Assembly: GCA_002269645.1 (NCBI GenBank)
Contig: NIVC01000412.1
Location: 682,001 to 746,000, forward strand
DNA length: 64,000 nucleotides
DNA from: Macrostomum lignano
Lineage: Eukaryota
Direction: 5' to 3'
The notes under the pieces are model-generated. The model searched no databases. It was not told where the DNA came from and was given only the letters and a program-made list of their open reading frames with translations. The position numbers and the translations under genes were made by a program. Below are positions 6,556-64,000 of this stretch, in pieces. How positions within the stretch are numbered: the first letter of the stretch is position 1; each line of letters opens with the position of its first letter.

Positions 6556-6601
6556 CCTCGGAGAGAATACTCGATCTTAAACAAAGCAACTTTCAACTCA
6601 C

Positions 6602-13624: not shown

Positions 13625-15198
13625 CGTCTCGTCGGGTAGAAGCCCAGCTCCGTCAGCATCTCGTACTTGATCGTGCGCAGGAACCGCCGATTGTAGCCCT
13701 GGTGTTGCACCAGACTTGAAAACAGCCCGGTGCACGCTGCGTCGAAATCGGCCATCAGGGAACACCGCCGGGCGTATCTGAGGAGCTGGGACTTCACCAC
13801 GCCCCGGAACGTCCGCTTCGGGTGGAAAGAGTCGCGGTGAATGAGCGTTCGGCTGTCGGTCGGCTTAAAATACACCTTAGTTGCCAGGCGCTTAACGTCA
13901 CCCTCGCGGTCCCAGAAGACGGTGGTATCCAGGAAGTTGACCTCGGTGCTGCTGTAGCTCAGCTGCAACCTGATGTTCGGGTCGAGGCCATCCAGGAGCT
14001 CGTGGAAGCGGACCAGCTCGTCTCTCGTTCCGTGCCAGACGCCGAAGATGTCGTCGATGTAGCGCAGCCACAGGGCGGGCTTCTGCGGGCTGAGCTCCAG
14101 GCCCCGCTGCTCCCAGTAGCCCATGTAGATGTTACTGTAGCTGGGCGCAAACGATTTTCCCATGGCCGTGCCTTTCACTTGCAGAAAAAATTTTCCATCG
14201 AACTCGAAGTCGTTGCGCTCCAGGTTCAGCTTGAGCAAACTGAGGAGGCTCGCGTCCGGGCGCCGGGCGTCCGGGTGCTCTCTGAAGGCCCTCTGTACGC
14301 ACTCGAGTCCGGCCGCGGTCGGGATGTTAGTGTAAAGGCTGGCGACGTCCATGGTGAACAGAAAGGTCTCGCCCCGCGCCGGGCAGGTGATGTCTCTGAT
14401 GGCCGCCTGGAAATGATTGGTATCCCTGATGAAGCTGGGCAGCTGGATGACGATCGGCTGCAGGAAGCTGTCGATGAAGCGGCCGCTGGCATATGATTCG
14501 CTGTCCACGTCAGACACGATGGGCCGGCCTGGCGGGATGTCGCCGAGCGGCCACGACTCGGCAGGCTTGTGAATCTTTGGCAGGATGTAAAAGCGTCGCG
14601 TCCGGAACTCCTCCTTCGGGCAGAAGGCGGTGAACTGGCGTTTGTCGATAAGCCTGCGGTCCAGTAGCGACTGGAAGACGGCGCGGATTCTCTGGGCCGT
14701 GAAGCGGTTGATCGGCTCGTTCAGAGGCCGGTAGAAGGCCGGGTCGTCCAGCTGACGCAGGCATTCACGGACATAGTCCTGCCGGTCCAGGATGACCAGC
14801 TGGCTGCCCTTGTCGGCCGGCTTGATGACGATGGACTTGTCTGCCCGTAGATCTCGCAGTGCCTTCGCCTCCGCCTGACTGATGTTAGGAGCGTTCCTGC
14901 AGTCCCGGATGTTCTCCCTGACGTCGTCCAGCTCCGCCAGAGCGGCTTGAATTTCGGGCCGGAGGCGGCTCGGATCGATGCTGGCCGTTGGGCGGCGGGG
15001 AAGCGGCGGACCGTCGTTCACCGTCAGTTCGCGCTTGAAGCCGCGAGCCGCCGACACGGCCAGACGCTCGCCAAAGTCGCGGACGCCGGACGCCAGTGAC
15101 TCCGCCGAGGTGCACCGAGGGGCCACTACGAAGGACTGGCCGCGCTCCAGCAGTTGCAGTTCAGTCGGTGCGAGAGCGCGGCTGGAGAGGTTCGTCAC
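13625..15198 (-). CDS. PLE reverse transcriptase (5' part of the interrupted ORF)
   Basis: Motifs NLS..L...E..LL, KPADKG, LPKIHK..GRPIVS, MDVASLYTNIP, GTAMG, WLRYIDDIF, FLD. Confidence 0.95.
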
Positions 15199-16850: not shown

Positions 16851-18275
<1,425 letters not shown>

Positions 18276-18609
18276 ACTGTCTAAAAGTTTCACTACATAG
18301 CATAAAAGACTTGATTTGGTCCTGAACCCGTGTTTGAAGTCCGCCACATCTAGCAGGCACTTATTTCACTCAATTACCTATAGCAGCCGCAGTGTAGTGG
18401 ACTGCGGACTGAAGGTCAGGTGCGCCCGCCCATCTGCGTAATTGGTTTTGTCAGCTCCATGGGATTTTGGCTTGAAGTTATTGGGGAAAATTTCTGTCTG
18501 TCACACGGGGCCTAGCAGGGGAGACAGCTAGATGCAATCCGCCCTACCGAATTCCTCTGCAAGGTCGAGTAAAGCTATTTTTAAGTGGCCCCTTCAGTCT
18601 GCCTATGGT

Positions 18610-32078: not shown

Positions 32079-32754
32079 TAATGACAGGACCTTTGTCTAG
32101 CCAATCCAAACAAGAAAGGTAATTTTGTTCACTTGCCGTTCTCTGGTAGCATGTCTATACTAGCTTTAGCTTTCATAAACTGCATGTAAGACAGAAGGCA
32201 TACAGTTATAACTTATATTTACTTGTTTCATTTGCAAGTGGGAAGTGGAAGTGGAATTCGCAAGTGGAATTTAAAATGATCGATCGTCTACTCTTGTTGT
32301 CTACTCTTGAGGCATTGTACATTAGACAGCTAAAGCCCACCATGAACATCCAACTTGGTGGTAGAGGGGCGAGTGTCCATCTAAGGGTGTTCTGACCCCA
32401 TGCGCTTGCCTCTTATTTAGGGCTATCTAACTCTGCTACCAAAACTTGCATCATTTTGGCTTACTAGACTTTAAAAATTTACCATCTCTCTGCATCTATA
32501 ATATTGCCTGAAGATGCCGATTGTTCGGCGAAACATGTCACGCGAAGATTAATAAAATAGTAATTTGGTATTATTTAAAAAATGCGAATGTTCGTTTTTG
32601 TTTTTGTTCTCCTGGCTTTTATCAAACGATGTATCTTACCTCGACTCTACCAAGTGGAAAGTCAATAGAAGCCACCGGGATCGAATCGACTAATGGGTTT
32701 CAAACACTAACTATGGACGATACTCGAAGAAACATACAGAGACGGATGACTTAC

Positions 32755-33493
32755 TTCCGTCAACGCCAAAGTCTATAGTAGCATAGAACTGTCTCTCCTT
32801 GGCGACGCACGTTAAAGTGTTATCGGTGCTAAACAGCACCGTCTGGTTGCCTAGGTAACGCCTGCCCAGCTGGTACAGATGCCGGATGTAGGCCAGGTCG
32901 CACTGACCAGTGCTACCGTACTCATTCTCCAGCTGCACCATGATCACATTGCCGCCGCTGGAGTACAGACGCCTGGCGATGATGGGCAGCAGGACGGCCA
33001 TCCATTCGTCGACTGCGGCCAGGAACTGCGGGTCGCTGCTGCGCATCACCATGGAGGCGTTGCGCTGCAGCAGCCAGGCTGGCAGGCCGCCGAAGTCCCA
33101 CTCGGCGCAGATGTACGGACCGGCGCGCACAATGGCCAAGAGGTCGTGCTTCTGCGCCAGCGCCAGGAACAGGTCGAGGTCGGCCGAGCCGGTGAACCGG
33201 TGCTGGCCCGGCCTGGGCATGTGGAAATTCCAGGGCACGTAGATTTGCACGGCGTTCAGGCCGGCGGCTCGCATTTTGGCCAGCCGATCGTCCCAGCTGT
33301 CAGGAAGCAGGCGGAAGTAATGAATGCTGCCGGATATGTACTGGAATGGTTGGCCATCCTTTAAAAAAGTATTGTTGTCGTAGTCAATTATGAAGCTTCT
33401 TTGAACGCTTGAATCATGTTGAACTGCTATGCTGAAGGAGATAAACCAGGCAGCGAATAGTAGGGCTGTAAAATCGATAAAGTTTACAAGCAT
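32755..33493 (-). CDS. GLB1: Beta-galactosidase, exon 1 (signal peptide, acid/base catalyst)
   Basis: FLKDGQPFQYISGSIHYFR, YVPWNFH, GPYICAEWDFGGLP, QLENEYG; ATG at 33493; donor GTAAGT; spliced product about 685 aa. Confidence 0.96.
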
Positions 33494-35054
33494 TTTTTTC
33501 AGTAGCAATATGCTCAGTCGTATACAGGGACAACTAAAATTCACTTTTTTAAAAGGATGTTTTAGTTGTCCCCTGGTCGTATAGTTTAAACTAAAGTTGT
33601 TTTGTTTGAAAATTTACATGCTAACCAATCACTCGAAATTCTAGGCATAATAACTTACCAGAATAGTCAATTTTCCGTGCCATACTTTTAAATGAGACAG
33701 TCTGAAATCGTCATGTAATTGTAATACATTCATTAGTAATAGTCATTAAAAAAGGAAAGTAAAAATTGGTACAGATTTATGATGGATTAATTAACTTTCT
33801 TTTTTACCTACAAAAGCTTAATTAATTTCTATAGCTGTAAAAATTCGGGAAGTTTTTGGCAAACTATACGGTTCGTCACAAACCGTTCGACATTTTTACT
33901 CAAACAAAGCTGGATTCTGACAGTTAACATTGTCCCACCATTTTTGGCGTAAAGTATATCGCTAAAATTAGAAAAAATAAAGTTATGGAGACGCAATAAC
34001 AATGCGCTAACCTTAGTGTCGCTGTTAGGTGAAATTCGGCTTTTTACTTCCTAATTAGAAATATGATGACAATTATATTCTTAATTTTGCAATGCTTTCT
34101 TGTAAAATTTGTATTTTAAATAAGCTATTTAAGTTAAGCTGTAAAACAATTTTTTTAATTTAAAGCGTAGTTTATGACACTGGTTATTTTAAAATAAACG
34201 AAATAGTAAATTAGCTGAAAAATAAGAACATAGTATGGGTGAAAAAAATTAACAGATATGTTTCCACGAACTATTTTGCCACAAATTGACAACTACTACT
34301 ACTTCGGACTGCGGCATTGCATTTCAATAGCTATAGTATAGGTAGGCGGTAGGTAGGCCTAAATGTTAAGTGCTAGTAAATAGATTTAAAGACCCATTTT
34401 TATTTTTTATTAGCCTAATCTAGCTATTCTTCAAAGTATTTTATTTCAGGTAAAAATAAGGACGGTAAAGTGTATTAATAGTATTTTAGACCATGGTATT
34501 GGCATAAAAGCTAAGGCCTAAAGGGCAAGGTAGTAAGGCTATGCCTAAAGGGTAAGGGTGCAGCATGCAGGTCGTTTCTTTCTTTGACGTCTGTTAGTCA
34601 GATTTATACAAGAAGAACATAAGGGCCAAGCTGGGCTAGCCCTAGGCTTGTTATAAATTAATAGGGCTATCTACTATACCAAATGGCAAGTTTGTTATAA
34701 AACACAGCTTTTTAATAATGTAGGCCTAACTTACTTGCAATTGCATTTTGAGTTTCTGAATTTTTTTACATATTATTGGCTTAGGCCAAGCATACAAATG
34801 GTCAATGGTGCAGGTTTTGGCATTCCTTTGGTTTACAATCATTGAAATTAGTGACAATCCCCATTAGAGAGATAGGGAAGATACAAAATTGTTGTTTATT
34901 TCATCAAAATGCAAAAAAAACTGTGTAGACAAGCACTCCAATCCTTTTTATTTATCCATCATAACACTAGCTGCATGTTTAAATGAAACAAGAAAGTAAA
35001 GGGGTTATAGTGATCCATTTCACAGTTCCAAGAATCCAAAGATGATCCTATTGA

Positions 35055-47295: not shown

Positions 47296-47307
47296 GTTTG
47301 TGACCTC

Positions 47308-48492
47308 TGAGTGTGGGGTTTGAGGGCGATTCTCAGTGTGGGGTTTGAGGGCGATTCTCAGTGTGGGGTTCAAAGGCGATTCTCAGTGTGGGGTTTGAGG
47401 GCGATTCTCAGTGTGGGGTTGGAGGGCGATTCTCAGTGTAGGGTTTGAGGGCGATTCTCAGTGTGGGGTTGGAGGGCGATTCTCAGTGTGGGATTTGAGG
47501 GCGATTCTCAGTGTAGGATTGAGGGCGATTCTCAGTGTGGGATTTGAGGGCGATTCTCAGTGTGGGGTTTGAGGGCGATTCTCAGTGTGGGGTTCAAAGG
47601 CGATTCTCAGTGTGGGGTTGGAGGGCGATTCTCAGTGTGGGGTTTGAGGGCGATTCTCAGTGTGGGGTTGGAGGGCGATTCTCAGTGTGGGATTTGAGGG
47701 CGATTCTCAGTGTGGGGTTCAAAGGCGATTCTCAGTGTGGGGTTCAAAGGCGATTCTCAGTGTGGGGTTTGAGGGCGATTCTCAGTGTGGGGTTCAAAGG
47801 CGATTCTCAGTGTGGGGTTCAAAGGCGATTCTCAGTGTGGGGTTTGAGGGCGATTCTCAGTGTGGGGTTGGAGGGCGATTCTCAGTGTGGGGTTGGAGGG
47901 CGATTCTCAGTGTGGGGTTGGAGGGCGATTCTCAGTGTAGGGTTTGAGGGCGATTCTCAGTGTGGGGTTGGAGGGCGATTCTCAGTGTGGGGTTGGAGGG
48001 CGATTCTCAGTGTGGGATTTGAGGGCGATTCTCAGTGTGGGGTTTGAGGGCGATTCTCAGTGTGGGATTTGAGGGCGATTCTCAGTGTGGGGTTGGAGGG
48101 CGATTCTCAGTGTGGGGTTTGAGGGCGATTCTCAGTGTGGGGTTGGAGGGCGATTCTCAGTGTAGGGTTTGAGGGCGATTCTCAGTGTGGGGTTTGAGGG
48201 CGATTCTCAGTGTGGGGTTGGAGGGCGATTCTCAGTGTGGGATTTGAGGGCGATTCTCAGTGTGGGGTTTGAGGGCGATTCTCAGTGTGGGGTGTGAGGG
48301 CGATTCTCAGTGTGGGGTTTGAGGCCGATTCTCAGTGTCGGGTTGGAGGGCGATTCTCAGTGTGGGGTTGGAGGGCGATTCTCAGTGTGGGGTGTGAGGG
48401 CGATTCTCAGTGTGGGATTTGAGGGCGATTCTCAGTGTGGGGTGTGAGGGCGATTCTCAGTGTGGGGTTTGAGGCCGATTCTCAGTGTGGGC
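47308..48492. repeat. 25-bp minisatellite in SAS-4 intron 3
   Basis: Unit GAGGGCGATTCTCAGTGTGGGGTTT. Confidence 0.96.
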
Positions 48493-48612
48493 TTCGAGTA
48501 CGATTCTTCTTAGTGAGAATAAGTGAAAGATTCTTAGTCGAATTTCAATGCAGGATTCTACTTCCGGATAGCACAGTTAATCCTTAATCGATCCCTAAAT
48601 CAATAACTCCAG

Positions 48613-51352: not shown

Positions 51353-51974
51353 TGAATTTTAACTGTTTGTGTATTAAAATTAGATTAAATTCAATTATTT
51401 GCAAAAATATTTTCATTCGCCTGTTCCCACCTATACAAAAATTTTTTATCTGCAATTAAATAAATTCCCTCCAATAGTAAAACAACTTGGTTTGTTGTTC
51501 ATTAATTAGCTAATTTTTGCTCATATATTTATGCTACCGTCCACATTGCTACTGATTTCGTTATGATTTGTCCTGCAATTCTTCGATTTTATTGTATAAA
51601 AACTGCCGGTCATTGTTTATCGTATATGTTTTCGTTTATCAGGTTGAATTAACTCAACTGGTTTGATTTAATGAACTGTCCGTCCCCTAAAACTCGCTGT
51701 TTTTAAATTCACTCACGCCCTTGACACTTGTGTTGTATGCCGGACACATACCTGCTTGCTAATCAATAAACACTTTTTTGTAAAGTTTTCACTAAGCATT
51801 GTATGCTCCCTTTGCGTTATTGATTCTATATAATTATATATACAATGAATTAATTAATATATATAATTCTATACAAATTCATGTTTCCCATCGAATGAGC
51901 GGTACTACTTTGTGACTAAAATTCACTAATTGACTGAGTGAGGCTAACTGTCATTCATGGGTGATGGCTCAATA

Positions 51975-52289
51975 TATGGCCTGTGAACATTGGGGAACTG
52001 GATCAATATGGCCTGTGTACATTGGCGAACTGGATCCATATGGCCTGTGTACATTGGGGAACTGGATCAATATGGCCTGTGTACATTGGCGAACTGGATC
52101 AATATGGCCTGTGTACATTGGGGAACTGGATCAAAATGGCCTGTGTACATTGGCGAACTGGATCAATATGCCCTGTGTACATTGGCGAACTGGATCAATA
52201 TGGTCTGTGTACATTGGGGAACTGGATCAATATGGCCTGTGTACATTGGCGAACTGGATCAATATGGCCTGTGTACATTGGCGAACTGG
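51975..52289. repeat. 32-bp minisatellite, about 10 copies
   Basis: Unit GGCCTGTGTACATTGGCGAACTGGATCAATAT. Confidence 0.94.
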
Positions 52290-53304
52290 TCAGTGCGTAC
52301 ATCAAGCCTCGAAAAAATCTCAAAAACGTTAAAACTTTAAATTTGTTTTGAGCGTTTAACCGTACCGTCTAAAATAAATTTATTACACGCGCTGATCGAC
52401 AAATAGATGAAATTGATTTATTTGCAATTTTTCAAACGCGCTAGCACGGCTTTATGTACAACAGAGCAGTGCGTGCCAAGCTTAAAATAATATTTCTATA
52501 ACTATGGGGCATAATTAAATTTGTAATTAATTATTGACAAGCAAACGCTGTGAAATGTTAAGAAAATCAACTAAAAATAATGGTTAAAGCCTGATAAAAT
52601 TACAATTAGGACAAGAAAAAATGTCACTTCACAACGCTGTACAAAATATTTATTTATGAAGATTATGATTTATAAATAGCAATTGAGTTTAAACGTGTAC
52701 AGTATGCGGAGACTTACGTAGCTAATTTATACTACTATTATTAGTACACTGAGAAAGAGTGAGACAGATCGGCTGTCAAAGCACGCACAGAAGAGACAGT
52801 TATCGCGCAGTTAAGGGGAACAGGATTTAGAAAGACAAAATTCACGGGACCGAGGGACCGAGTTTACTTATTAATAAACATATATTCTCCCTTGACTATT
52901 ATGAATGAGCGGACGAATTAAATGTTGATTTGTAACAGTGTTCATTCTGTTTTGTTTGTCAATTTTGATTGAAGTCTGGTTATAGTACATTACATCAGCT
53001 CTATTTTAGTGCCTTATTATATTCAAATCTTATTAATCAAACTAACAAAAATATTCTTTAATAAAATTTCTGCTACTTATAGTAAGCAAAAAAATAATAA
53101 GAAAATACAAATTTAATAAATAATTACAACAAAAATAGCAAGTTTGACGGGAGGCGCAATTATATAACTAATACTACTTACAGAGTAGATAAGTATTAAT
53201 AACACAGATATGCTGCTGGGTTTGAAATTAATTTATAAAATAGTGGCCATTTATAAATAAAAGCTTAAAGGATGAAGGTGATTATCAGAGATTGAAAAGC
53301 GATA

Positions 53305-54158
53305 CTCAGGTAGATTGTAGGGCGATTCTCAGGTAGATTGTAGGGCGATTCTCAGGGAGATTGTAGGGCGATTGTCAGGGAGATTGTAGGGCGATTCTCA
53401 GGGAGATTGTACGGCGATTCTCAGGGAGATTGTAGGGCGATTCTCAGAGAGATGGTAGGGCAATTCTCAGAGAGATTGTACGGCGATAAGGGCGATTCTC
53501 ATGGAGATTGTAGGGCGATTCTCAGAGAGATGGTAGGGCAATTCTCAGGGAGATTTTAGGGCGATTCTCAGGGAGATTGTAGGGCGATTCTCACGGAAAT
53601 TGTAGGGCGATCCTCAGGTAGATTGTAGGTCGATTCTCAGGTAGATTGTAGGGCGATTCTCAGGGAGATTGTAGGGCGATCCTCAGGGAGATTGTAGGGC
53701 GATTCTCATGGAGGTTGTGGGGCGATTCTCAGAGAGATGGTAGGGCGATTCTTATGGAGATTGTAGGGCGATTCTCAGGTAGATTGCCGGGCGATTCTCA
53801 GGGAGATTTTAGGGCGATTCTCAGAGAGATGGTAGGGCACTTCTCATGGAGATTGTAGGGCGATTCTCATGGAGATTGTGGGGCGATTCTTATGGAGATT
53901 GTAGGGCGATTCTCAGGTAGATTGTAGGGCGATTCTCAGGGAGATTTTAGGGCGATTCTCAGAGAGATGGTAGGGCAATTCTCAGGTAGATTGTAGGGCG
54001 ATTCTCATGGAGATTGTAGGGCGATTCTCAGGGAGATTTTAGGGCGATTCTCAGAGAGATGGTAGGGCACTTCTCATGGAGATTGTAGGGCGATGCTCAT
54101 GGAGATTGTAGGGCGATTCTCAGGGAGATTGTAGGGCGATTCTCATGGAGATTGTAGG
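53305..54158. repeat. 23-bp minisatellite
   Basis: Unit AGGGCGATTCTCAGGGAGATTGT. Confidence 0.95.
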
Positions 54159-55061
54159 GTATGGAGATTTTAGTCTAAGGCAATTTACTTTAAGGCTAAC
54201 AAAGACCAGATAAAGGGGGCAATTAAAGCGCTTTATACATGACATCCCATAGCTAACATATCAGGGGAAGTTTTAAGCAAATCGTGTTAACAGCACACTT
54301 GCGACACTCACAGCGGAGAGAAACGCAAAAAATTAGCAAAACAGACAAAAATAAACACCTAACGCACACGACGGCAAAGCAGTGCTTTTCAACCCAATTA
54401 TTACATAAACAGCAAAATTAATCGGATAAGAACATAAAAATTCCTTGATAAGAAACCAGCGCATAAAGTACAGGCAGTTATATAATTTTACGCGATTTAG
54501 TGATCAAAATGTTACCCAAATTTAAGCACTGGAATGCGATTTAAACAAAACGATTTAGAAATTTAAGATTAAAAGAATATAACCCTTGGAAAGCATGCCT
54601 AAGTACTGATGCTGACAGTAGTCAGTAGCTAATATTAATCTTTATATTCACCAAGTACAAGCACAAAAAAACTAAATACTTCAATACCAGCGCATGCAAG
54701 GAGACAGACGGAAAGACTAATTTGAAATTACAAATTTAAGCTGTTTTGAGTTGCTATTGATAGTATTGCATTACATAATAATAATCCTTATTTTCCAATA
54801 AAATTGCTTTCATGTGAAAAAAATTGCACTATTTGGAAAGTGAATCCAATTTTATGTCTCTGCAGAGTCAACCACCTTCTTCTCTTCTTCTCTCTCCTCT
54901 CCTATCTCATCTCTCTTCTCCTCTAGTTCTTTCTTCCGGCCCTAGTGTTTGCCGACAGATTAGAATTTGCGATGAAAGGCAAGATGGCAGCCCAGCTGTT
55001 GTAATTCTGCTCTTCAAAAAATGCATCTAGCCAATCTGGTCAGCTGGTCAAGCCGGTCGTG

Positions 55062-57215
55062 TCACAAGACCGACGCCTCGGCGCGCTCTAGCAAGTCGCG
55101 ATCTTCGCCAAGAAATTCGCGCATCAGCTGCCTGGCGTCATCTCTCAGCCAATAGGAGCGCAAGGCCAGGCACTCGGCCTGGCAGGCCTGGATAACAGAC
55201 GACCTGCTAGTCGAATGCATCAGCGCTTTAGTCTGGCGCACATTCTCGGCGCCGACGCTGGCGCCAATGCTGGCGCAACGGACGGCGGCTTCCTGTTGAA
55301 ATGTGTCGGCAAAGATCACGCTAGACACCAGGCCCCGAGTGCAAGCCTCGTTAGCTGTGAGCTTCCGTCCGGCAAGCAGCATCTCAGAGGCGGTCGGCTT
55401 GCCCAACGCCTGACGCAGAGTGTAGGACACGCCAGCCTCGCACGGCTGCTTGAGCTTGGCGTAGGGCAAATAAAAATAGGCGCTATCGCTAGCGTAGACA
55501 AAATCGCACAGCGGCAGCAGGGCCGCGCCTAAGCCTACGCAAGCTCCTGTAACCGTGGCAACCAATAACTTGGGAAATTCAACCATAGCCGACACTAAGC
55601 GTTGCAATTCGTCAGTGAGCTGATTGACAGCTAGAGAAGCCTCCTGACCGGGCTTGGCTGCTAGCATTGAGCTGAGATCGACTCCCCTACTGAAGCAGCG
55701 GGGATCTGTGTTAGCCAGACGGACCAGCCTGCAAGCTGGATTGTCCAGCGCCTGCTGCAGCGCCCGGCACAGCTCCTGCATCAGACGGACTGTGAAGCAG
55801 CAGCCAGGCTGTCCAGTGCCATTCCTGGGCCCAACTAGCCAGATTTCAAACACACCCGGACTGTGGGCCGGCTGTTTAACAAATAACTCATGATAATTGT
55901 TGCGAATATGAGTTGTTTTCTTTGCTTGCAGCTGCTGCTGCTGCTGCTGGGACTTCGGTTTAGCCTTGGCTGACACAGTGGACACAGCAACTGAGCGCGG
56001 CTTCTGATTAGGCAAGTACAGAGTCAGCGAGTTGTCAGTTGAACAGCGCACCTTCTTTAAGCGGCCAATTCTAACCATATCCTCGATGACCGCTTCGGCT
56101 AGTCCGGCACCGACTCGGAGCTTCTTGCACACTGCTTGCACTACTCGATCTAGTAGTACCTTGCGCTTCAACCGACGGATGCTATCAATAGCGTCGATAA
56201 CTCCGGCGTGGTAGCGGCGAAGATCGCTAGACGACGATGTCGGCGTCTGCGGCAGCGAAGGCTGCGACTGTTGCTGCTGCTGCTGCTGTTGTTCAGGCCG
56301 CGGCGAAGGCTCCAGAGGCGGAGACGAGGCCGGAGCTAGAAGAGCCGAAGGAGAATCGACAGCGGATGCAATCAAAGCAACAGGAGCTGTCGAAGGAGAC
56401 GAAGGAGACAAGTGTCGAGGCGTGACCGGAGCGCTGCCGCCTTCTAATCCGTATTTCAAATTCCAGTCAATAGATGCTGGTGGCAGAGCCGCTAGCTCTG
56501 ACTGCTGCTGCTGCTGCATCTGAGACGGAATTGGCAGCGGCGGCGACTGCGACTGCTGCGACGGTGGCAACGGCTGAGGCGGCTGCGAAGGCTGCGAATT
56601 TGGCGATACGGTTGAAGAAGCAGCGGACGATGCGGCGGACGAAGCAGACGACGAAGAAGAGGATGCAGACGCGGCTGAAGACGGATTAGAAGCAGAAACT
56701 GTTGAAGCGTCATCTACAGATTTTTGCTGATTCTTTTTCTTGGCTTGCTGCTTCTGCTGCCTTGGCTGCAATTTCTGCAGCCTTTTCTTGGCTTTTCTCT
56801 TTGGCAAAGCCAGCACGCGAGCCCGTTGCGGTTGCTGTTTGCCGCCTTTCTTTCGCATCAGTTTAGCAGCTGTCTGCTGCTTCTGCGGCAATTTCTGAGC
56901 CTGCGGCGGTTCGGGCTGCGACTGTTGCAGCTGTTTCAGGGCCATCAGCTTCGGCAGCCTCGGCTGAGTCTGCTGCTTTTTCGGAGAGCCCTGGTCAATT
57001 GGTTGCTGCTCCTTTGAAGAGCTCGGTGAACTGGCATTCGAAGCCGAATTATTTGAATTCTTTGATCGGTTATGAAAATCTCTGACCAATCGGTAAGCAA
57101 CAGGCATGATCTCTGTGGCCGGCTCCCAGGTGTCCTGACTGGATTTGAAACCAGTCCAGCGGATCCTGTATTCAACTCGGCCTTGCTTCTTGCGCTTGTC
57201 AATTATCTTGGAGAT
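55062..57215 (-). CDS. CDYL: CDYL-like protein, exon 2: chromodomain, winged-helix-like segment, crotonase fold
   Basis: ISKIIDKRKKQGRVEYRIRWTGF...DTWEP (chromodomain); GLGAALLPLCDFVYA, ASEMLLAGRKLTANEACTRGLVS (CDY-type enoyl-CoA hydratase fold); acceptor GCACAG; the exon extends upstream of the track ORF. Confidence 0.93.
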   Translation of the reverse strand: MSKIIDKRKKQGRVEYRIRWTGFKSSQDTWEPATEIMPVAYRLVRDFHNRSKNSNNSASNASSPSSSKEQQPIDQGSPKKQQTQPRLPKLMALKQLQQSQPEPPQAQKLPQKQQTAAKLMRKKGGKQQPQRARVLALPKRKAKKRLQKLQPRQQKQQAKKKNQQKSVDDASTVSASNPSSAASASSSSSSASSAASSAASSTVSPNSQPSQPPQPLPPSQQSQSPPLPIPSQMQQQQQSELAALPPASIDWNLKYGLEGGSAPVTPRHLSPSSPSTAPVALIASAVDSPSALLAPASSPPLEPSPRPEQQQQQQQQSQPSLPQTPTSSSSDLRRYHAGVIDAIDSIRRLKRKVLLDRVVQAVCKKLRVGAGLAEAVIEDMVRIGRLKKVRCSTDNSLTLYLPNQKPRSVAVSTVSAKAKPKSQQQQQQLQAKKTTHIRNNYHELFVKQPAHSPGVFEIWLVGPRNGTGQPGCCFTVRLMQELCRALQQALDNPACRLVRLANTDPRCFSRGVDLSSMLAAKPGQEASLAVNQLTDELQRLVSAMVEFPKLLVATVTGACVGLGAALLPLCDFVYASDSAYFYLPYAKLKQPCEAGVSYTLRQALGKPTASEMLLAGRKLTANEACTRGLVSSVIFADTFQQEAAVRCASIGASVGAENVRQTKALMHSTSRSSVIQACQAECLALRSYWLRDDARQLMREFLGEDRDLLERAEASVL

Positions 57216-58979
57216 CTGTGCAAATGGAGTGAGTCAAAGTTGCACGAGTCACAATTTGGCTAAAGGAGACCAAGATCTCAAGCACTGTTACAATAGATAG
57301 AATTTGAGATTTCCTTAATCAACAAACTGCTAATAGGCTTTAATTTTGAAATTTTTATGCATGCTAAGAAAACTTCTTATAACTAAATATAGAGAAAAAA
57401 TCATCTAAATAAATGTTATATAATGCATAGTACAAAATCTTTATGCCATTTGTATTAGGTATAAGAAACATTGGGTGAAATTTTAATCTTTACTTTTCCT
57501 AATACAGGTAAAAAGTTGAATTCAGTTGTCTTTATACTTCTTCTATATACTTCTACTGACACATTAAGAACAAAAAGTAAAAAAGTAAGGAATATCAAAA
57601 AAGTTTTAAGCGAGATATTACATTGATTATAGTTGTAAACTATCAAGATATGAGTGCCAATATATTAGTATAAGCAAGATATCAATATTTTTCTAAACAA
57701 AAAACATTTTAATTATTTCTTAGGCTTAATAAATTGTGGTTAAAATTAAAGTGATACTAAATAATTCTTAAAATATTTTTATTATATACATATAAAATAC
57801 AAAGTAAGTTAAGCAAAGCCTATGTTCTTTCTTTGTTATGAACATTAACTAAGCTTTGGCGCACTAAGTATTTATTAATTTATAGCAGTTTTCATTTTTA
57901 TAGGTATTAATAACTATCTGCATAAAACATTTGGCTATATAATAGGCATTTTTGGATTCTTTTATTGAATATCTAAGACAAAGTACTGACTACTTTAAAG
58001 GGTCCTTATGTTGCAATGCAAAACCCTATTGGAATAAGCTAACAAATTGCGGACATGTGTCTGTCGCGTTTACAAAATTTTTCAGTGTTGCGTCGCAGTG
58101 GAGTCTTCAGCAAGTGGTTTCACATCGCAGAGGAGTCATTAAGCAGCTGGTGTTGCATTGGTGTTGCAGAGTCCATGGTTTTGTTTGGTAGTGTTGTGAC
58201 ACTGTTGCAGTCGTCAGGTGCCACAACTTCTTAAAAGATGAGCTTCTTGTAATTTTTTGTTTTATCCTCTTTTTTGTTTCAACTTACTTTTATGTCATTT
58301 ATAATATAACATGTGAATAGACAATATTTGCTGTTGCGGACTTGAAATTAAAGTTTCTTGTTTTCTAGTTTTGATTTTGACATTTTTTGCTAATGACAAA
58401 CATTGAGAATTGAGTGAACTGAACTCAGATGAAGTGACCGCTGGGCCAGCTGCTAGCCTGCTATGAATTGTGAAAAACAAGTAACAAGTAATACTTGTTA
58501 GTTATAAAGCATATGCTGTTTTTCTAATTGCTGTACCTTTGTTGTTTTATTTTTTATTGTTTTTAAATTTCATTTCTTTTTCTGTGAAATTGAAAGGAAT
58601 ACTGGTCTTAGTCTTTGGAGTGAATGGCAGAACAGGAATTATCAATTTAAGTGAATGCTCTCCCCCCCCCCAGTTATTCAGTCAACAGACATTGGTTTTG
58701 CATGTCTGCATCACCCCCCCCCCCTAGTCAACAAAATTTGGTATTGCGTTGCACTTTTGAGGGCACAATTTTGGCACCCATGTCGCACATCTATAGGTTT
58801 TTGAAACTTATTCTAATAAGGATGCAAAAAAGGTCTTTTATTGTTGCAACCTCTTCTAATAATGTCTGGCTTATAAATCCTGAGTAAATTTGTTTTGCTT
58901 GCATAAACTTGAAAATATAGTAAAGTGGTCACTTTTTCCTATGTACGGTCTTCGTTTTCTAGGTACAATACCATAAAAG

Positions 58980-59621
58980 TAGTGTTCCGCCATAAGGAAG
59001 GTCCATGTACTGTAGCCGTAGCTGTAAGCAAAACTATGGCTTACTCCAATTCTCCGTATTCCATAGCTGTAGGGACCCCAAAATTACTATATTCCCGTAG
59101 TTCCCATAGCCATAGCCGTAGATTTAACAAAAAGTCTAAAAAATAAAATATTTTGAATCAAGAAGATAACTTAGTGCTTAAACAACTGCAAATAAAACTA
59201 GAAAATAAAAGAAACACTTAATTGACTTTGTAAGATTATGTTTTGTCTTTTTTCAAAGCAACAATACTTAATCATTATTAAAAGTACTAACGCCGAACTT
59301 TTTCACATTAATAAAAATTAGAGTTTGCTAGTGTTTTATTGTATTTTTTAGGTATATTTTATAAGTTTCTAGGTTAATAATACAGTTTAATAAAAGTATA
59401 TTTGTTTTACTCTATCTGTTTCTAATATTTTTCAATTTTTAACATTAATAACTACAGCTACGGGAATCTACGGAATGTGACAGGCATTGACAGCAACTAC
59501 TATATTTCCATAGTTGTAGCCACAAGAGCAGCTAGCTACCGTAGGCGTATCCACCTATTTTACCGTATTTGCCGTAGGATCCTGTAGCCATAGGCCTAGC
59601 TACAGCTATGGCAGAACACTA
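58980..59621. mobile_element. hAT-like MITE in CDYL intron 1
   Basis: TIR TAGTGTTC(C/T)GCCATA; subterminal CCATAGC(C/T)GTAG repeats; CATAAAAG on both flanks, offset by 4 nt on the right. Confidence 0.72.
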
Positions 59622-60132
59622 CTTACATAAAAGCCTAAAACTAGGCTTAATAGTTTGAGAATGTGAAAATAAAGTTAGATATGATGACATTTTTCATTTT
59701 AAAAATCAACTAAATATTACCTAAAATAAATTAAAACATAGGCTGACTTCATATGCTAAGTAATACTAATTAGGCCAGGGCTTATAGTAAGGGCTGTACC
59801 TGTAAGGCAAAGAAAGTTATTTAATCTTAATAATAATAGCTAAGTTAAATACATTAAATGGTCGAATTAGCACTGGTAGGAAAAATGATTTAAATAATCC
59901 AACATTTAGAACCTAATACAATTACAAATCAAAGACAGAGAGATTTAGTTCAAGCTCTAGGCCTACCCAGCCTTAGCCTTATGTTATGATGTCTTCAAAA
60001 TATCCCTCTAGTCTAAACTCTGCATAAATAGTTTTACCAAGATGGCAAGTTTACAGCTTAAAATAAAAAAACTATAAGCAAAAAAAGTTTTAGCGTAAGT
60101 AGCACGTGTTTAATCAATCTTTCTATACTTAC

Positions 60133-60150
60133 TCTGTAGCTTCTTCCCAT
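60133..60150 (-). CDS. CDYL: CDYL-like protein, 18-nt coding part of exon 1 (MGRSYR)
   Basis: ATG GGA AGA AGC TAC AGA followed by GTAAGT; phase 0; completes the chromodomain as YR-ISKIIDKR. Confidence 0.72.
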
Positions 60151-61634
60151 TTGCGTTTTAGATCAAACGTAGAATACTTTGACGCGCGGTTTTAGTCAAA
60201 TGATTCAAATAGCTGTTAGCAAAAAATGAAATAGGATAGATTCAAGCGCTATTTATTTCTTTTTTTGATATTTACTGCAGATAACATTAAAGCAATGACT
60301 ATACAAAATCTGTCAGAAACAAGTAAATTGTAGTTTCGATCTCTAGCTCGATCTCTCTAGCAAGTTTTACCTTTTTTGAATTAGTGCCTTGAACTGACTT
60401 AAATTAAAATAATATTTTAAGTTTTAATAACCGTCTTGTCGCAATTTTGCACAGACTGATATCTAGGCGTAAACTCTTATGCATCTGCATAGGCCTCCCG
60501 CATACAAATAGTCCAGAAGTTAAAACTACAAATATAGCCCCATAACTGCGCGAAAATATAGAAGAAGATATTTTAAAATGATTCAAAACGAGGGACATTG
60601 ATCGGGTCAAAATCAAAATCAAAAGCTCCTGAATAAAATCGTGCCTTTCTGATTGCACGAGATAAAAATTTATGTAAAGATATAAATGTATTATCTTGAA
60701 CACTGAATATATTATTATGGCTGCATGCTTCCTGATTAACCTGCCTCGACATTTTGCTTTTTAGCTACATGCCTGCGCAGAGCCTTTATGTACATATAAC
60801 ACAGGTCTCCAGTATTCATCTCATCACTGCACCCAATGTAAAGCGATGGTTTTCTACGGCTGTAATATGGTCTAATGCATTCACAGAATCCGCAAGAAGG
60901 ACTTTGAAAAGCCTTACACAGCAGCAGTACTTCAACTTTGATAACTAACCGCTTTATAACTGTTTATAAAATTTCGCTGGGGTCTAGAGCCACTGCAGGA
61001 AGATGAAAATTGGTCGAAAGCTCTGTGGCCCCAAATTTGACAACTGCTGAAACAGCGGATCGCCTTCAAGCTAAAAAAGGGTGCATGTTATATAATTGCA
61101 TCCATGCATGTACGTACACGCTGTACACAGAAATTATGAGTGGTACATGCATGTATCCCATGAAGAGCCCCTGTCGCTTTTTGAACGGAAATGCACCAAG
61201 ATAATACCAACAAATTCCAAAACTACAGTACAGCCTCACATGAATGACCTCGGATGAGGCTTGAAGTCACAGCTGGTAATTATCATTCAACAAAATGGAA
61301 AAAATGCGTTTGACCCTCCGGGGTGAAGTAGTGTAGTGCGTGTACCGGTATCCGAGGTCTGCGCACAGCTTTTAGCAGCTAGGTTACATGTACTGGCCTC
61401 GCGTCTTAAATCTACTGGCCTCGCGTCGACTACTACACTATTTATTGGTCGCAACTTGTACATTTTAACTACATCTAATCAGAGACGCTATATACATGTA
61501 CATGTACATGTTATGATGACATTTTCAAGCTTAAAGTATAACCTGCACTCGCTCATGGTGGCTCATGCTGGCCAGGGGTGTACATGAATATTCACCATGG
61601 CAATTTTAATGTTTAAGTTAAAACAAGCGGCATT

Positions 61635-63230
61635 ATGGAGGCCGTACATGATGAAGTTCTGTGTGATAGATTTTTATTGCGTACCCTTCTCAAACAACAC
61701 CTAATGGGGTCGGAGCTGACCCAAGGACTATTAGACCCGAGTGTTCCTATAGTGGTCCTTGAGCTGACCGTGGAGCGAGCGACTGGACACTGGACTACCT
61801 CAGGCCCAAGCCATCAAAGGAGGTAGCCACGCAGACACAAGCAGCTCATTTTGAGTCCAGCTACGACAACTGCGGCTCGATCAGTGGTGCAGGTGCATTG
61901 TGGCGGACCAACCTGTCAAGCTGCTCTTTGACTCCGGTTCGCGAGTCTCTATCATCACCAAGATACAACAGACTTCTGACCAACGTGTCCCTGTAGACAT
62001 CTACGGAAGCTGGTCGCTTTCAACGGCAGCAAAATCTGCATGCTTCGTGAATCCTGACCTCGGTGCAGCTCAAGGACAAGGGGCCGGTTGCCTTGCGTCA
62101 ACATAAGCGTGGTCAAGACAGGATCCGACATACTGTGGTGCGACCTCATGGATCAGCTGAGACTGCGGATCGTCGCTGCAGACGGTGAGCGAGTGCAGGC
62201 AGTCGGCACGAGAGTCCTGACTGACTGGATCCCAAGCCGGTATGACCAGTTTACTCAGGAACTCAGACACATCACAGGATTTCAGCACAGGCCGCAAGTC
62301 AACCCCGCGGTGCAACCGACAGCTCAACCGTTGCGCAGAGTGCTGCCCAGCCTAAGAGATTCGGTTCAAAAAGAGGATCAACATCTGCTGCAGCAAAAGC
62401 ATCATTGAGGAGACCGACGCCTCAAACTGGGTGTCAAACCTAGTCGTGGTGCCAAAAGCGATCATGACCAGACTGATCTGCAACGACCTGAGAGTCCCAA
62501 ACAAGAGAATCATACAGAAGAGGTCACGATGCCTCTCCAATTTAGAACTTGAATTTGTCATGCAGCTGGAGCTGACCGAGAACTGCAAAAATCTGACGGC
62601 TTTAGGGACAGAACGAGGCCTATTTCGATATCGAAAGGATGTGATTCAAGGGTGCAGTGCACCCTATTGGCGACATTGCGGCGCACGTGGCATCACGGGA
62701 AGAGCATGGCAATTAGCACCCGATCAAGGTGCTACAAGTTTTGATGACGCACAACGTGACCATCAACACAGTCAAGTGCACCTGGCACCATGCAAGGATG
62801 AGGTTAACTTCCTAGGCTAATCAAGCTATCGAGCATTGTTGTTGTTAAACGAGGGTGGGAAGCAGTGCTACCCGCGGATCAGCCCAGAGAAGGGCTCTAC
62901 CGCTAGCTTACAGGGCCTATCTACCAGGGGCATTTAGCCCGAGCAGCCCAGATTGGGTCCAGGACTCAAGGCCTGGTGAGAGTGCCTTATTGGATGCTAC
63001 TCACCCAAGCCTATGGACTAAGACATCGCCTACCCATAGTGGAATCAGGAACGGTGCTAGGACCGAGTCCACCCAAGCCACTCGCCAGCGACAAAGTCCC
63101 GAGTGGAAAGCAGTCCGAGAGCGGGAAAACCCGAAGTCTACGGAAAAAGCTAAATTATTGGAGCGAGTCTCGAAGCTTATTACAATGGGCGAGTCTCCTA
63201 TCAGGAGTAGGATCAGGCTCCTATAGGGCT
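61635..63230 (+). mobile_element. Decayed Ty3/Gypsy LTR retrotransposon (gag-pol remnant)
   Basis: Protease LLFDSGSRVSII; RT fragments ITGFQHRPQVNP, WVSNLVVVPK, a disrupted YxDD-like site and EVNFLG; many frameshifts and stops; LTRs not identified. Confidence 0.82.
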
Positions 63231-64000
63231 GCAAGCCTCAAGGCTTTTTCGCTATCCAGAGCGTTAAGGTGCAGTCGAAATGTAAGCTGTGACATCTCAA
63301 TTTTATTGCACAAACGCAAAAAATCCAATCGACATTTTTATTTTTCCTACTTAAAGTAGACGAAATGTGCGCTACTCCAATTTTATATAGAATCCGCACG
63401 ATGAATTTCGCCACAAAAGCGTAAAGCTCAGAGAATTAGGCTTAGCTTGCAGCATTGTTCAGGCTTAAATAGGCAGTCGGACACCCCAACTGCCGGGCTG
63501 GTCCGGAGTCAATGGGTTAACTGAATTGCTCTCAAAATACCCCATTGGCACTCACTTGACCAGCTTTTTTGTTGCCTTTAATCCAAAAGTTTTCAAATAT
63601 TTCTGGGCTTTAGGAAACGAGCATTCAACATGTAAATGTACATAAATAGGTGAATGACAAAGACTACTTGATCCTTGACGAGATCAATAGTCCAACACTG
63701 ACCAGCAGATTTTCAAACAACTTTTTTTTAATTTTTCCAATGTTACATTCTTTCAAAATCTTCTACGCATAGTTTTGTCATTTTCTACTGTAAGTAATAT
63801 AATAGCGTGTGTGTAGAATTATTTACCGGAGAAATTGGCCGGATTGCATGAGCTGCGCATTGAGGAGTTTAAACAGCAGTTGCAGTTGCCATTTTAACCA
63901 GGCGGTCCGGAGACGAAGGGTGAACTATAACGAGCTTACACAGCCATGAATTCCATCCCATCGACACTTGAAATTGACAGTCGAAATTTTTATGTAGAAT

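What the first reader, a model, noticed from the sequence alone, without database searches (positions are those of the whole stretch)
56011..56213. CDYL-like protein with an inserted SAMD1/KAT6-type winged-helix domain (chromo + WH + crotonase)
Seen in sequence: between low-complexity tracts the ORF holds a compact segment of about 68 aa, YHAGVIDAIDSIRRLKRKVLLDRVVQAVCKKLRVGAGLAEAVIEDMVRIGRLKKV. It aligns without gaps to my recollection of the winged helix of KAT6A ([28 protein letters not shown]...LELSVKDGTILKV) and SAMD1 (YQEWILDTIDSLRSRKARPDLERICRMV). Established: those WH domains bind unmethylated CpG DNA, and vertebrate CDY/CDYL proteins have only a methyl-lysine chromodomain and a crotonase fold. 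Inference: this protein may join a histone-methyl reader, a CpG/DNA sensor and an acyl-CoA-binding corepressor in one chain, an architecture I do not recognise as described. SAMD1's RK dipeptide aligns to LK here, so DNA specificity may differ.
Basis: partly seen in the sequence, partly recalled or inferred. Interest (0 to 1): 0.8.

Follow-up and report, generated by a model that had tools for sequence, protein, structure and literature searches.

The report
Flatworm CDYL with possible winged-helix insert
A flatworm (Macrostomum lignano) version of the chromatin co-repressor CDYL carries, between its histone-reading and enzyme-like domains, a small basic folded module that weakly but specifically resembles the CpG-DNA-binding winged helix of SAMD1/KAT6A; the resemblance is suggestive but not proven.

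Summary
The 68-aa segment YHAGVIDAID...LTLYLP is encoded on the minus strand at 56010-56213. It lies inside one uninterrupted 2.15-kb exon that also encodes a chromodomain and a crotonase (ECH) domain. The gene is the Macrostomum lignano CDYL orthologue; two annotated copies are 99% identical.

The winged-helix (WH) reading is only partly supported.

For it:
- The segment's best Pfam match, and for two of three constructs its only match, is SAMD1_WH (E 0.001-0.003). That beats all 15 shuffled or reversed controls.
- MAFFT reproduces the gapless register with the solved SAMD1, KAT6A and ZMYND11 domains. It keeps the key DNA-contacting lysine, an invariant Arg and most of the hydrophobic pattern.
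- AlphaFold2 from the single sequence predicts alpha1-alpha2-alpha3-beta1-beta2, the SAMD1-type order.
- Between gene copies the segment has 4 synonymous and 0 non-synonymous changes.

Against it:
- The score (18-19.5 bits) is below Pfam's cut-off of 24.5. ZMYND11, the most distant solved member, scores 36.6.
- The invariant HG motif is missing.
- The models are low confidence (pLDDT 58-64), and Foldseek finds no significant match.
- No homologue exists outside M. lignano among 1.84 billion representative proteins.
- Six deuterostome CDYLs lack the segment.

The architecture is not annotated and I found no paper describing it. Verdict: a real CDYL variant with an inserted folded basic domain, probably (about 0.6) a divergent SAMD1-like WH. 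DNA or CpG binding is untested. Interest is moderate.

The parts
60133..60150 (-). Exon 1 of the CDYL-like gene: ATG GGA AGA AGC TAC AGA (MGRSYR), followed by a GTAAGT donor. It holds the first aromatic-cage Tyr of the chromodomain.
   Evidence: identical to the annotated start of P0001 in locus L001. Gene model.
57216..60132 (-). Intron of about 2.9 kb (GTAAGT ... TTTGCACAG).
   Evidence: One search shows the donor and acceptor contexts in the window and in L001. One search shows collinearity with L001.
55062..57215 (-). Exon 2: one uninterrupted reading frame of 717 codons plus stop. It encodes the rest of the chromodomain, linker 1, the candidate WH, linker 2 and the crotonase domain. The whole protein is 723 aa.
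57066..57215 (-). Chromodomain (exon-2 part). Aromatic positions are Y5 (in exon 1), W26 and F29.
   Evidence: Pfam Chromo E 5e-11 / 1.9e-11. Top PDB sequence matches are CDYL, CDYL2 and CDY1 chromodomains, E 1e-10 to 5e-9. Alignment A1.
56214..57065 (-). Linker 1, 284 aa of low complexity: Q/S/P/K-rich, with several basic clusters such as KRKAKKRLQK.
   Evidence: It holds 6 of the 7 non-synonymous differences and one of the two codon indels between gene copies.
56010..56213 (-). Candidate SAMD1-like winged-helix domain, 68 aa, pI about 10. Predicted order is alpha1-alpha2-alpha3-beta1-beta2.
   Evidence: Pfam SAMD1_WH E 0.001-0.003, profile positions 3-54 of 63. BLASTP to the SAMD1 6LUI chain E 8e-5. 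hhalign Prob 42%. AF2 secondary structure. MAFFT A3. 4 synonymous and 0 non-synonymous differences between copies.
56160..56177 (-). Basic motif RRLKRK at the predicted C-terminal end of helix alpha1. It aligns to SAMD1 R43-S-R45-K46-A-R48 and KAT6A K21-K-Q23-K24-Q25-R26, the element those proteins insert into the CpG major groove. It also fits a monopartite NLS consensus.
   Evidence: Alignment. Residue roles from PMC8115922 and PMC9881136. Helix end at this position in the AF2 model.
55110..55796 (-). Crotonase / enoyl-CoA hydratase-isomerase fold (ECH_1), the CDY/CDYL C-terminal domain.
   Evidence: Pfam ECH_1 E 2e-31. The top PDB matches are CDY2 2FW2 (E 7e-35) and CDY1 2FBM (E 9e-34); CDYL 2GTR follows at 2e-31, level with peroxisomal/mitochondrial enoyl-CoA isomerase ECI2 (2F6Q, 4U18; 1-2e-31). 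Best database relatives are CDYL/CDYL2, E 1e-38 to 3e-50.

Best explanation
This is the Macrostomum lignano orthologue of CDYL. It has an N-terminal methyl-lysine-reading chromodomain and a C-terminal crotonase-fold domain. Inside its long disordered hinge sits a roughly 70-residue, strongly basic, folded module. That module is most likely a highly diverged member of the SAMD1-like winged-helix class (SAMD1, KAT6A/B WH1, ZMYND11). Proposed mechanism, all inferred: the chromodomain docks on H3K9/K27-methylated nucleosomes. The crotonase domain oligomerises and supplies the CoA-binding, crotonyl-CoA hydratase and corepressor function, as in vertebrate CDYL. [quoted passage not shown] The result would be multivalent histone-plus-DNA anchoring. 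What is shown: the sequence, the single-exon architecture, CDYL orthology, a sub-threshold but specific profile match, the predicted alpha3-beta2 order, and conservation among gene copies. What is inferred: the WH fold itself, any DNA binding, and any preference for unmethylated CpG.
For: Architecture: all three domains lie in one open exon. The layout is the same in two annotated M. lignano proteins, P0001 and P0012.

CDYL orthology.

WH evidence:
- SAMD1_WH is the best Pfam family hit for the isolated segment with three different boundaries (E 0.0032, 0.0018, 0.0011). It is the only hit for two of the three constructs.
- Fifteen shuffled or reversed controls gave a best E of 0.013.
- The only other hit to the real segment is Ribosomal_S25, by my knowledge also a winged helix (E 0.14).
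- BLASTP to SAMD1 gives E 8e-5 and to KAT6A E 0.027. hhalign E is 2.6e-4.
- In the ungapped-score test, 0 of 5000 shuffles reached the SAMD1 score and 11 of 5000 reached the KAT6A score.
- MAFFT places the segment in the same gapless register as the three solved domains. I39, K46 and R53 (SAMD1 numbering) are invariant, and hydrophobic residues are kept at positions 35, 36, 39, 42, 54, 58, 73, 77 and 82 in all four sequences; position 85 is Val here, in SAMD1 and in KAT6A but Thr in ZMYND11.
- K46 / KAT6A K24 is the main base-contacting residue; the K24A mutant binds 32-fold more weakly.
- AF2 single-sequence models give H-H-H-E-E, with helix 1 ending at the aligned R45/K46 position.
- The segment has a pI of about 10, like SAMD1 (10.5) and KAT6A (9.4).
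- Between gene copies the WH has 4 synonymous and 0 non-synonymous changes, against 8 and 7 in the linkers. Folded domains together against linkers give Fisher p = 0.01.

Biological setting: M. lignano is reported to retain DNMT1 and DNMT3 and low-level 5mC (PMC11292947). A methylation-sensitive CpG reader is therefore biologically conceivable.
Against: - The Pfam score is 18-19.5 bits, below the gathering score of 24.5. ZMYND11, the most distant solved member, scores 36.6.
- With the whole protein as query the E-value is only 2.7-2.9.
- phmmer of the segment against all PDB sequences finds nothing at E <= 10.
- The HG motif, invariant in SAMD1, KAT6A and ZMYND11, is L-R here. SAMD1 wing residues Y87/K88 are C/S, and Pro49 is Val.
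- AF2 confidence is low (pLDDT 58.5 and 63.6, pTM 0.40-0.43). Foldseek against PDB gives no hit with E < 0.7 or E < 3.1 for the two models, and the one SAMD1-like WH chain listed, ZMYND11 9LOA, aligns badly (TM 0.24).
- No homologue of the segment other than the M. lignano protein itself appears among 1.84 billion representative proteins.
- Six deuterostome CDYLs have no SAMD1_WH signal.
- The WH-only synonymous/non-synonymous contrast is not significant (p = 0.13).
- ZMYND11's WH did not bind DNA in EMSA, so membership would not guarantee DNA binding.
- Known SAMD1-like WH domains sit at the extreme N-terminus, whereas this one is internal.
Confidence: 0.6

Rival explanations
1. The segment is a real folded, conserved module, but its resemblance to SAMD1/KAT6A is chance or convergence between basic helical domains. 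It would then be a lineage-specific helical domain that mediates protein-protein contacts or oligomerisation in the CDYL hinge.
For: All similarity statistics lie in the twilight zone: sub-threshold Pfam, hhalign Prob 42%, and no PDB hit by phmmer. One of 15 shuffles already reached E 0.013. Foldseek gives no WH hit. The HG motif is absent. There are no homologues elsewhere.
Against: The best Pfam hit among 24,736 families is exactly the family seen by eye. The match is in one consistent gapless register, covering 52 of 63 profile positions. The functionally central Lys and the hydrophobic core pattern are kept. The predicted alpha3-beta2 order and the position of the helix-1 end match SAMD1. 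The chromatin-protein context fits.
Confidence: 0.25
2. The segment is a true SAMD1-like winged helix that does not bind DNA, or binds it without CpG or methylation specificity. ZMYND11's WH behaves this way. It would serve as a protein-interaction or structural module.
For: ZMYND11 WH showed no DNA binding in EMSA (PMC9881136). R45 is replaced by L, Y87/K88 and R94 equivalents are not conserved, and Pro49 and HG are lost.
Against: The alpha1 C-terminus is more basic than in ZMYND11: RRLKRK against RNQKQI. The K46/K24 and R48/R26 equivalents are kept. CpG cytosines are read by main-chain carbonyls at positions 45 and 46, and KAT6A has Gln at position 45, so the side chain there is not critical. 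The pI is about 10.
Confidence: 0.3
3. The segment is not a domain. It would be a less-biased stretch of the disordered hinge whose basic patch (RRLKRKV) acts as a nuclear localisation signal.
For: RRLKRKV fits the monopartite K-K/R-x-K/R consensus (my knowledge). The AF2 models are low confidence. The segment is flanked by low complexity.
Against: Both AF2 runs predict three long helices plus a beta-hairpin rather than coil. The segment has regular hydrophobic periodicity that matches a known fold. It shows no non-synonymous change among three gene copies, while the true linker accumulates them. Linker 1 already has stronger NLS-like clusters.
Confidence: 0.08

Closest known systems
CDYL / CDYL2 / CDY (chromodomain Y-like proteins of deuterostomes)
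   Same: An N-terminal chromodomain with aromatic cage positions, a long disordered hinge and a C-terminal crotonase fold, in the same order. The best sequence relatives and the best solved-structure matches for both domains are CDY/CDYL proteins.
   Different: The hinge contains an extra folded basic segment of about 68 aa. This segment is absent from the hemichordate, amphioxus and fish CDYLs examined. The cage Tyr after the Trp is Phe here.
SAMD1-like winged-helix domains (Pfam PF21524: SAMD1, KAT6A/KAT6B WH1, ZMYND11; PDB 6LUI, 7Y43, 8H7A, 9LOA)
   Same: Size, basic charge and the predicted alpha1-alpha2-alpha3-beta1-beta2 order. A gapless register with the invariant Ile, Lys (K46/K24) and Arg (R53), and most of the hydrophobic core pattern. 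A basic C-terminal end of alpha1, the element that reads CpG in SAMD1 and KAT6A. An occurrence in a chromatin regulator.
   Different: The score is below the Pfam threshold. The HG motif and Pro49 are missing, and the wing residues are not conserved. The domain is internal rather than N-terminal. It is fused to chromo and crotonase domains, not to SAM, MYST/PHD or PHD-bromo-PWWP-MYND. Only 21-24% identity to SAMD1 and KAT6A and 16% to ZMYND11.
Polycomb-like proteins (PHF1 / MTF2 / PHF19)
   Same: One chain joins a histone methyl-lysine reader (Tudor) with a winged helix that binds unmethylated CpG.
   Different: A different WH subclass that reads CpG through the W1 loop in the major groove. 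It has no crotonase domain and no sequence relationship to the segment here.

Membership tests
CDYL family | N-terminal chromodomain with an aromatic cage | tested here: met
   Pfam Chromo E 5e-11 and 1.9e-11, above the cut-off. Top PDB matches are CDYL 7N27/2DNT and CDYL2. Y5, W26 and F29 align with the Y/W/Y of CDYLs.
CDYL family | C-terminal crotonase (ECH) fold most similar to CDY/CDYL | tested here: met
   ECH_1 E 2e-31. The top PDB matches are CDY2 2FW2 and CDY1 2FBM (E 7e-35 and 9e-34). CDYL 2GTR (2e-31) scores level with enoyl-CoA isomerase ECI2 (2F6Q, 4U18). Database relatives with chromo plus ECH score E 1e-38 to 3e-50, against 1e-11 to 4e-14 for stand-alone ECH proteins.
CDYL family | Methyl-lysine histone binding, and CoA binding or crotonyl-CoA hydratase or corepressor activity | not testable with these tools
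   These are biochemical properties, known for vertebrate CDYL from the literature (my knowledge).
SAMD1-like winged helix (PF21524) | Profile match at or above Pfam's gathering score | tested here: not met
   18.0, 18.8 and 19.5 bits against a cut-off of 24.5; E 0.0032 to 0.0011 for the isolated segment and 2.7-2.9 in the whole protein. Positive controls: SAMD1 100.8, KAT6A 97.4 and ZMYND11 36.6 bits.
SAMD1-like winged helix (PF21524) | Three alpha helices followed by two beta strands joined by a wing loop (fold of 6LUI / 7Y43) | tested here: inconclusive
   AF2 single-sequence models give H-H-H-E-E in the right places, but with pLDDT 58.5 and 63.6. Foldseek against PDB finds no significant match. 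No deeper alignment could be built.
SAMD1-like winged helix (PF21524) | Invariant Lys at the C-terminal end of alpha1 (SAMD1 K46, KAT6A K24), flanked by basic residues | tested here: met
   The Lys is invariant in the 4-sequence MAFFT alignment. RRLKRK aligns to RSRKAR and KKQKQR. Roles.
SAMD1-like winged helix (PF21524) | HG motif between alpha2 and alpha3, invariant in the three solved members | tested here: not met
   It aligns to L-R. A V-G lies two residues downstream and would need an indel.
SAMD1-like winged helix (PF21524) | Binding of unmethylated CpG DNA (not universal: ZMYND11 lacks it) | not testable with these tools
   Needs EMSA, ITC or PBM. Family behaviour from PMC8115922 and PMC9881136.

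The most novel reading that the evidence does not exclude
In the Macrostomum lineage, CDYL acquired a functional SAMD1-type winged helix that reads CpG DNA. One corepressor chain would then integrate histone methylation (chromodomain), DNA sequence or methylation state (WH) and acyl-CoA chemistry (crotonase). That combination is not described for any CDYL, and it would occur in an animal that still has DNMT1/3 and low-level 5mC.
Probability: 0.3. Interest if true: 0.55.

Novelty: new variant of a known kind. Interest (0 to 1): 0.38.

Why it matters
If the insert is a working SAMD1-like winged helix, it would be the first CDYL with a built-in DNA reader. It would also extend a recently defined CpG-binding WH class, known from SAMD1, KAT6A/B and ZMYND11, to a new architecture and to a flatworm. 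That would give a natural experiment on how histone-mark and DNA-sequence reading are combined in a corepressor. M. lignano is a tractable regeneration model with RNAi and transgenesis (my knowledge) and some DNA methylation. If the resemblance is only chance, the gene is an ordinary CDYL orthologue with a lineage-specific hinge module. The concept of a methyl-histone reader joined to a CpG-binding WH already exists in Polycomb-like proteins, which limits the surprise.

Tried and rejected
- Word-indexed homologue search with the 83-aa segment found nothing.
- The full-length query was swamped by low-complexity words and returned only the species' own protein.
- A concatenated chromo+WH+ECH query, an artificial sequence with the low-complexity linkers removed, returned deuterostome CDYLs and bacterial ECHs only. 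It returned no flatworm or other spiralian orthologue.
- Exhaustive phmmer of the 89-aa segment against 1.84 billion representative proteins found only P0001.
- phmmer of the segment against PDB sequences gave no hit at E <= 10.
- Two AlphaFold2 single-sequence runs (89 aa and 76 aa) gave low-confidence models. Foldseek against PDB gave no significant hits; the top non-significant hits include proteasome and eIF3 subunits. A deeper alignment could not be built, because only M. lignano copies with an identical segment were available.
- A 3-sequence HMM of the solved WH domains against all 1067 six-frame ORF pieces of the window ranks the CDYL exon first, but only at E 0.031.
- The metagenome scan found only a bacterial-type ECH.
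- Exact look-ups aimed at transcript evidence failed. The spliced protein was not accepted, and the internal-ATG ORF is not on record.
- Literature: no paper links CDYL to a winged helix in context (the three co-mentions are unrelated), and none pairs Macrostomum with CDYL.
- Considered and rejected: a gene-model fusion artefact, because all domains share one uninterrupted exon. Also rejected as the main reading: a pure NLS or disordered linker, because the predicted secondary structure is regular and the segment is conserved.
Full report
**1. What is in the sequence**

The finding lies on the minus strand. Translating 55062-57347 shows one open frame that reads ...ISKIIDKRKKQGRVEYRIRWTGFKSSQDTWEP... 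through to ...ERAEASVL*. The quoted peptide is present exactly. YHAGVIDAIDSIRRLKRKVLLDRVVQAVCKKLRVGAGLAEAVIEDMVRIGRLKKVRCSTDNSLTLYLP occupies 56213 down to 56010. It is flanked by poly-Q/S/P tracts on both sides.

The frame opens at a TTTGCACAG acceptor, so exon 2 is 57215..55062 (717 codons plus stop). The 18-nt first exon, ATGGGAAGAAGCTACAGA followed by GTAAGT, lies at 60150..60133. This matches the annotated start MGRSYR of the database protein P0001. The complete protein is 723 aa.

**2. Organism and gene copies**

The only close database relative is P0001, [quoted passage not shown]. It is 721 aa and 99% identical. A further copy, P0012 (Mlig010982g1), sits in the same 90% cluster.

The P0001 locus (L001, assembly GCA_002269645.1) is collinear with the window. 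Non-coding flanks are 87-96% identical, whereas the coding exon differs at only 26 codons plus two single-codon indels. The window is therefore another copy or haplotype of the same M. lignano gene. The 68-aa segment is identical in all three copies.

**3. CDYL orthology**

- Pfam finds Chromo (E 5e-11) at the N-terminus and ECH_1 (E 2e-31) at the C-terminus.
- The best solved-structure sequence matches to the chromodomain are CDYL, CDYL2 and CDY1.
- The best matches to the crotonase domain are CDY2 and CDY1. CDYL (2GTR) follows, level with the enoyl-CoA isomerase ECI2.
- A query made of the three ordered regions with the low-complexity linkers removed (an artificial concatenation) returned CDYL/CDYL2 from Ptychodera, Branchiostoma and Fundulus at E 1e-38 to 3e-50. 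All of these carry chromo plus ECH. Stand-alone bacterial-type ECH proteins scored far behind.
- The aromatic positions of the chromodomain (Y5, W26, F29) align with those of the CDYLs.

**4. Is the insert a SAMD1/KAT6-type winged helix?**

*Evidence for*

(a) Pfam scan. Scanning the isolated segment against all of Pfam gives SAMD1_WH (PF21524) as the best family in every case. It is the only family matched by the 102-aa and 81-aa constructs.

| Construct | E-value | Bits | Other hits |
|---|---|---|---|
| 102 aa | 0.0032 | 18.0 | none |
| 81 aa | 0.0018 | 18.8 | none |
| 68 aa | 0.0011 | 19.5 | Ribosomal_S25, E 0.14 |

Each match covers profile positions 3-54 of 63. Ribosomal_S25 is itself a winged-helix protein by my knowledge. 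One reversed and fourteen shuffled versions gave best E-values of 0.013, 0.073, 0.093 and 0.18, or nothing.

(b) Check of the recalled sequences.

(c) Pairwise and profile comparisons.
- BLASTP of the segment against these chains gives E 8e-5 (SAMD1) and 0.027 (KAT6A) as single comparisons.
- hhalign against a 3-sequence profile gives E 2.6e-4 and probability 42%.
- The gapless alignment has 14/66 identities to each.
- Its best ungapped score was reached by 0 of 5000 shuffles for SAMD1 and 11 of 5000 for KAT6A.

(d) Independent alignment. MAFFT of the segment with SAMD1, KAT6A and ZMYND11 reproduces the same gapless register through the three helices and the first strand.
- Three residues are invariant across all four: Ile39, Lys46 and Arg53 (SAMD1 numbering).
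- Hydrophobic residues are kept at 35, 36, 39, 42, 54, 58, 73, 77 and 82 in all four. Position 85 is Val in the segment, SAMD1 and KAT6A, and Thr in ZMYND11.
- A Gly is kept at the alpha3-beta1 turn, as in KAT6A and ZMYND11.

(e) The DNA-reading element. The structural papers identify the C-terminal end of alpha1 as the part inserted into the CpG major groove.
- Lys46 (SAMD1) / Lys24 (KAT6A) makes the base contacts. K24A weakens binding 32-fold.
- The cytosines are read by main-chain carbonyls of residues 45 and 46.
- Residue 45 is Arg in SAMD1 but Gln in KAT6A.
- Here the motif is RRLKRK. The Lys and the following basic residue are kept. The Leu at position 45 falls at a position that varies within the family.

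(f) Predicted secondary structure. AlphaFold2 from the single sequence predicts H-H-H-E-E(-E) for the 89-aa construct and H2-19, H22-35, H40-54, E58-61, E67-70 for the 76-aa construct. This is the "three helices then two strands" order described for SAMD1. Helix 1 ends at the residues aligned to R45/K46.

(g) Charge. The segment is strongly basic, with pI about 10.0, similar to SAMD1 (10.5) and KAT6A (9.4).

(h) Constraint between gene copies. Counts are for the window copy against L001.

| Region | Synonymous | Non-synonymous |
|---|---|---|
| Candidate WH | 4 | 0 |
| ECH domain | 7 | 0 |
| Two linkers | 8 | 7 (plus both indels) |

Folded domains against linkers give Fisher p = 0.01. The WH alone gives p = 0.13.

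*Evidence against*

- The Pfam score is below the curated cut-off of 24.5 bits. ZMYND11, the most divergent solved member, scores 36.6 bits; SAMD1 and KAT6A score about 100.
- With the entire protein as query the E-value falls to 2.7-2.9.
- phmmer of the segment against all PDB sequences finds nothing at E <= 10.
- A 3-sequence HMM ranks this exon first among 1067 ORF pieces of the window, but only at E 0.031.
- The HG motif, invariant in the three solved members, is L-R here. Pro49 is Val. The SAMD1 wing residues Y87/K88 and R94 are not conserved.
- Both AF2 models are low confidence (mean pLDDT 58.5 and 63.6, pTM 0.40 and 0.43). Foldseek against PDB gave no significant match. The one SAMD1-like WH chain that appeared (ZMYND11 9LOA) aligned badly, with TM 0.24 and rmsd 9.8. 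This is an inconclusive test rather than a refutation, because the tool warns that low-confidence models give meaningless matches.
- An exhaustive HMMER scan of 1.84 billion representative proteins found no relative of the segment other than the M. lignano protein.
- The six deuterostome CDYLs show no SAMD1_WH signal, even at E <= 10, and have nothing alignable at that place.

**5. Most likely mechanism**

I take the protein to be a CDYL-type corepressor. Established knowledge for vertebrates, not tested here, is that the chromodomain binds H3K9me2/3 and H3K27me2/3, and that the crotonase fold is oligomeric and CoA-binding with crotonyl-CoA hydratase activity.

The hinge has gained a small basic winged helix. 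The best-supported mechanistic guess is an added DNA contact through the alpha1 C-terminus. This would make chromatin binding multivalent.

Whether binding is CpG-specific or methylation-sensitive is open. The central Lys is there, but the wing determinants are not, and ZMYND11 shows that family members can lack DNA binding. M. lignano is reported to retain DNMT1 and DNMT3 and low-level 5mC, so methylation-sensitive reading is at least meaningful in this animal.

My probabilities:

| Claim | Probability |
|---|---|
| Folded domain | about 0.85 |
| Homologous to the SAMD1-like WH class | about 0.6 |
| Binds DNA | about 0.45 |
| Prefers unmethylated CpG | about 0.3 |

**6. Comparison with what is known, and novelty**

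The gene is a member of the CDYL family; both defining domains were tested and met. Membership of the insert in PF21524 is not established. The profile threshold and the HG motif were tested and not met, the fold test was inconclusive, and the key-Lys test was met. I therefore describe it as a "candidate divergent SAMD1-like WH" and do not file it as a member.

The precomputed Pfam annotation of P0001 lists only Chromo and ECH. Its source names are "hypothetical protein" and "Chromo domain-containing protein". The literature searches found no paper that links CDYL with a winged helix in context (three unrelated co-mentions) and none pairing Macrostomum with CDYL. The architecture thus appears undescribed.

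Conceptually, a methyl-histone reader joined to a CpG-binding WH already exists in Polycomb-like proteins. Lineage-specific domain insertions in chromatin proteins are also common. I rate this a new variant of a known kind, of moderate interest, pending a confident fold assignment and a DNA-binding assay.

Noticed in passing
window 1-54200, e.g. 16851-18282, 23079-25613, 47306-48507, 51974-52289, 53288-54159: The window is packed with long minisatellite arrays: 38 TRF rows with score >= 200 (overlapping rows can describe the same array). Examples are CTGTCTGT x179 and a purine-rich 21-mer x124 with GC skew up to 0.88. Many of the long mechanical ORFs overlap these arrays. The two arrays just downstream of the CDYL-like gene are also present in the second copy, L001.
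   Followed up: partly
window 6598-7335 (-): An ORF piece with a strong Innexin match (Pfam E 9e-49). It is probably an exon of a gap-junction innexin gene.
   Followed up: partly
window 32711-33544 (-): An ORF piece with a strong glycosyl hydrolase family 35 (beta-galactosidase) match, E 2e-73. It is probably an exon of a GLB1-like gene.
   Followed up: partly
window 13280-15198 (-): Weak, sub-threshold reverse-transcriptase (RVT_1, E 2e-4) and zf-RVT (E 2e-4) matches in adjacent ORFs. This is probably a decayed non-LTR retroelement.
   Followed up: no
window 51974-64000 vs L001 (GCA_002269645.1 NIVC01000118.1): The window is collinear with a second M. lignano locus. Non-coding DNA is 87-96% identical, but the CDYL-like coding exon is about 98.8% identical. 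A third annotated copy (P0012, Mlig010982g1) differs from P0001 by one residue. This is consistent with the duplicated or polyploid genome of this species.
   Followed up: partly
P0002-P0007 (deuterostome CDYLs), chromodomain region: Six of the seven CDYL proteins give a sub-threshold hit to Pfam Mtf2_C, the Polycomb-like MTF2 C-terminal domain (best E 6e-5). I assume the hit falls on the chromodomain, reflecting a chromo-like fold of that PCL domain, but its position was not examined. It is a side link between CDYL and PCL proteins.
   Followed up: no
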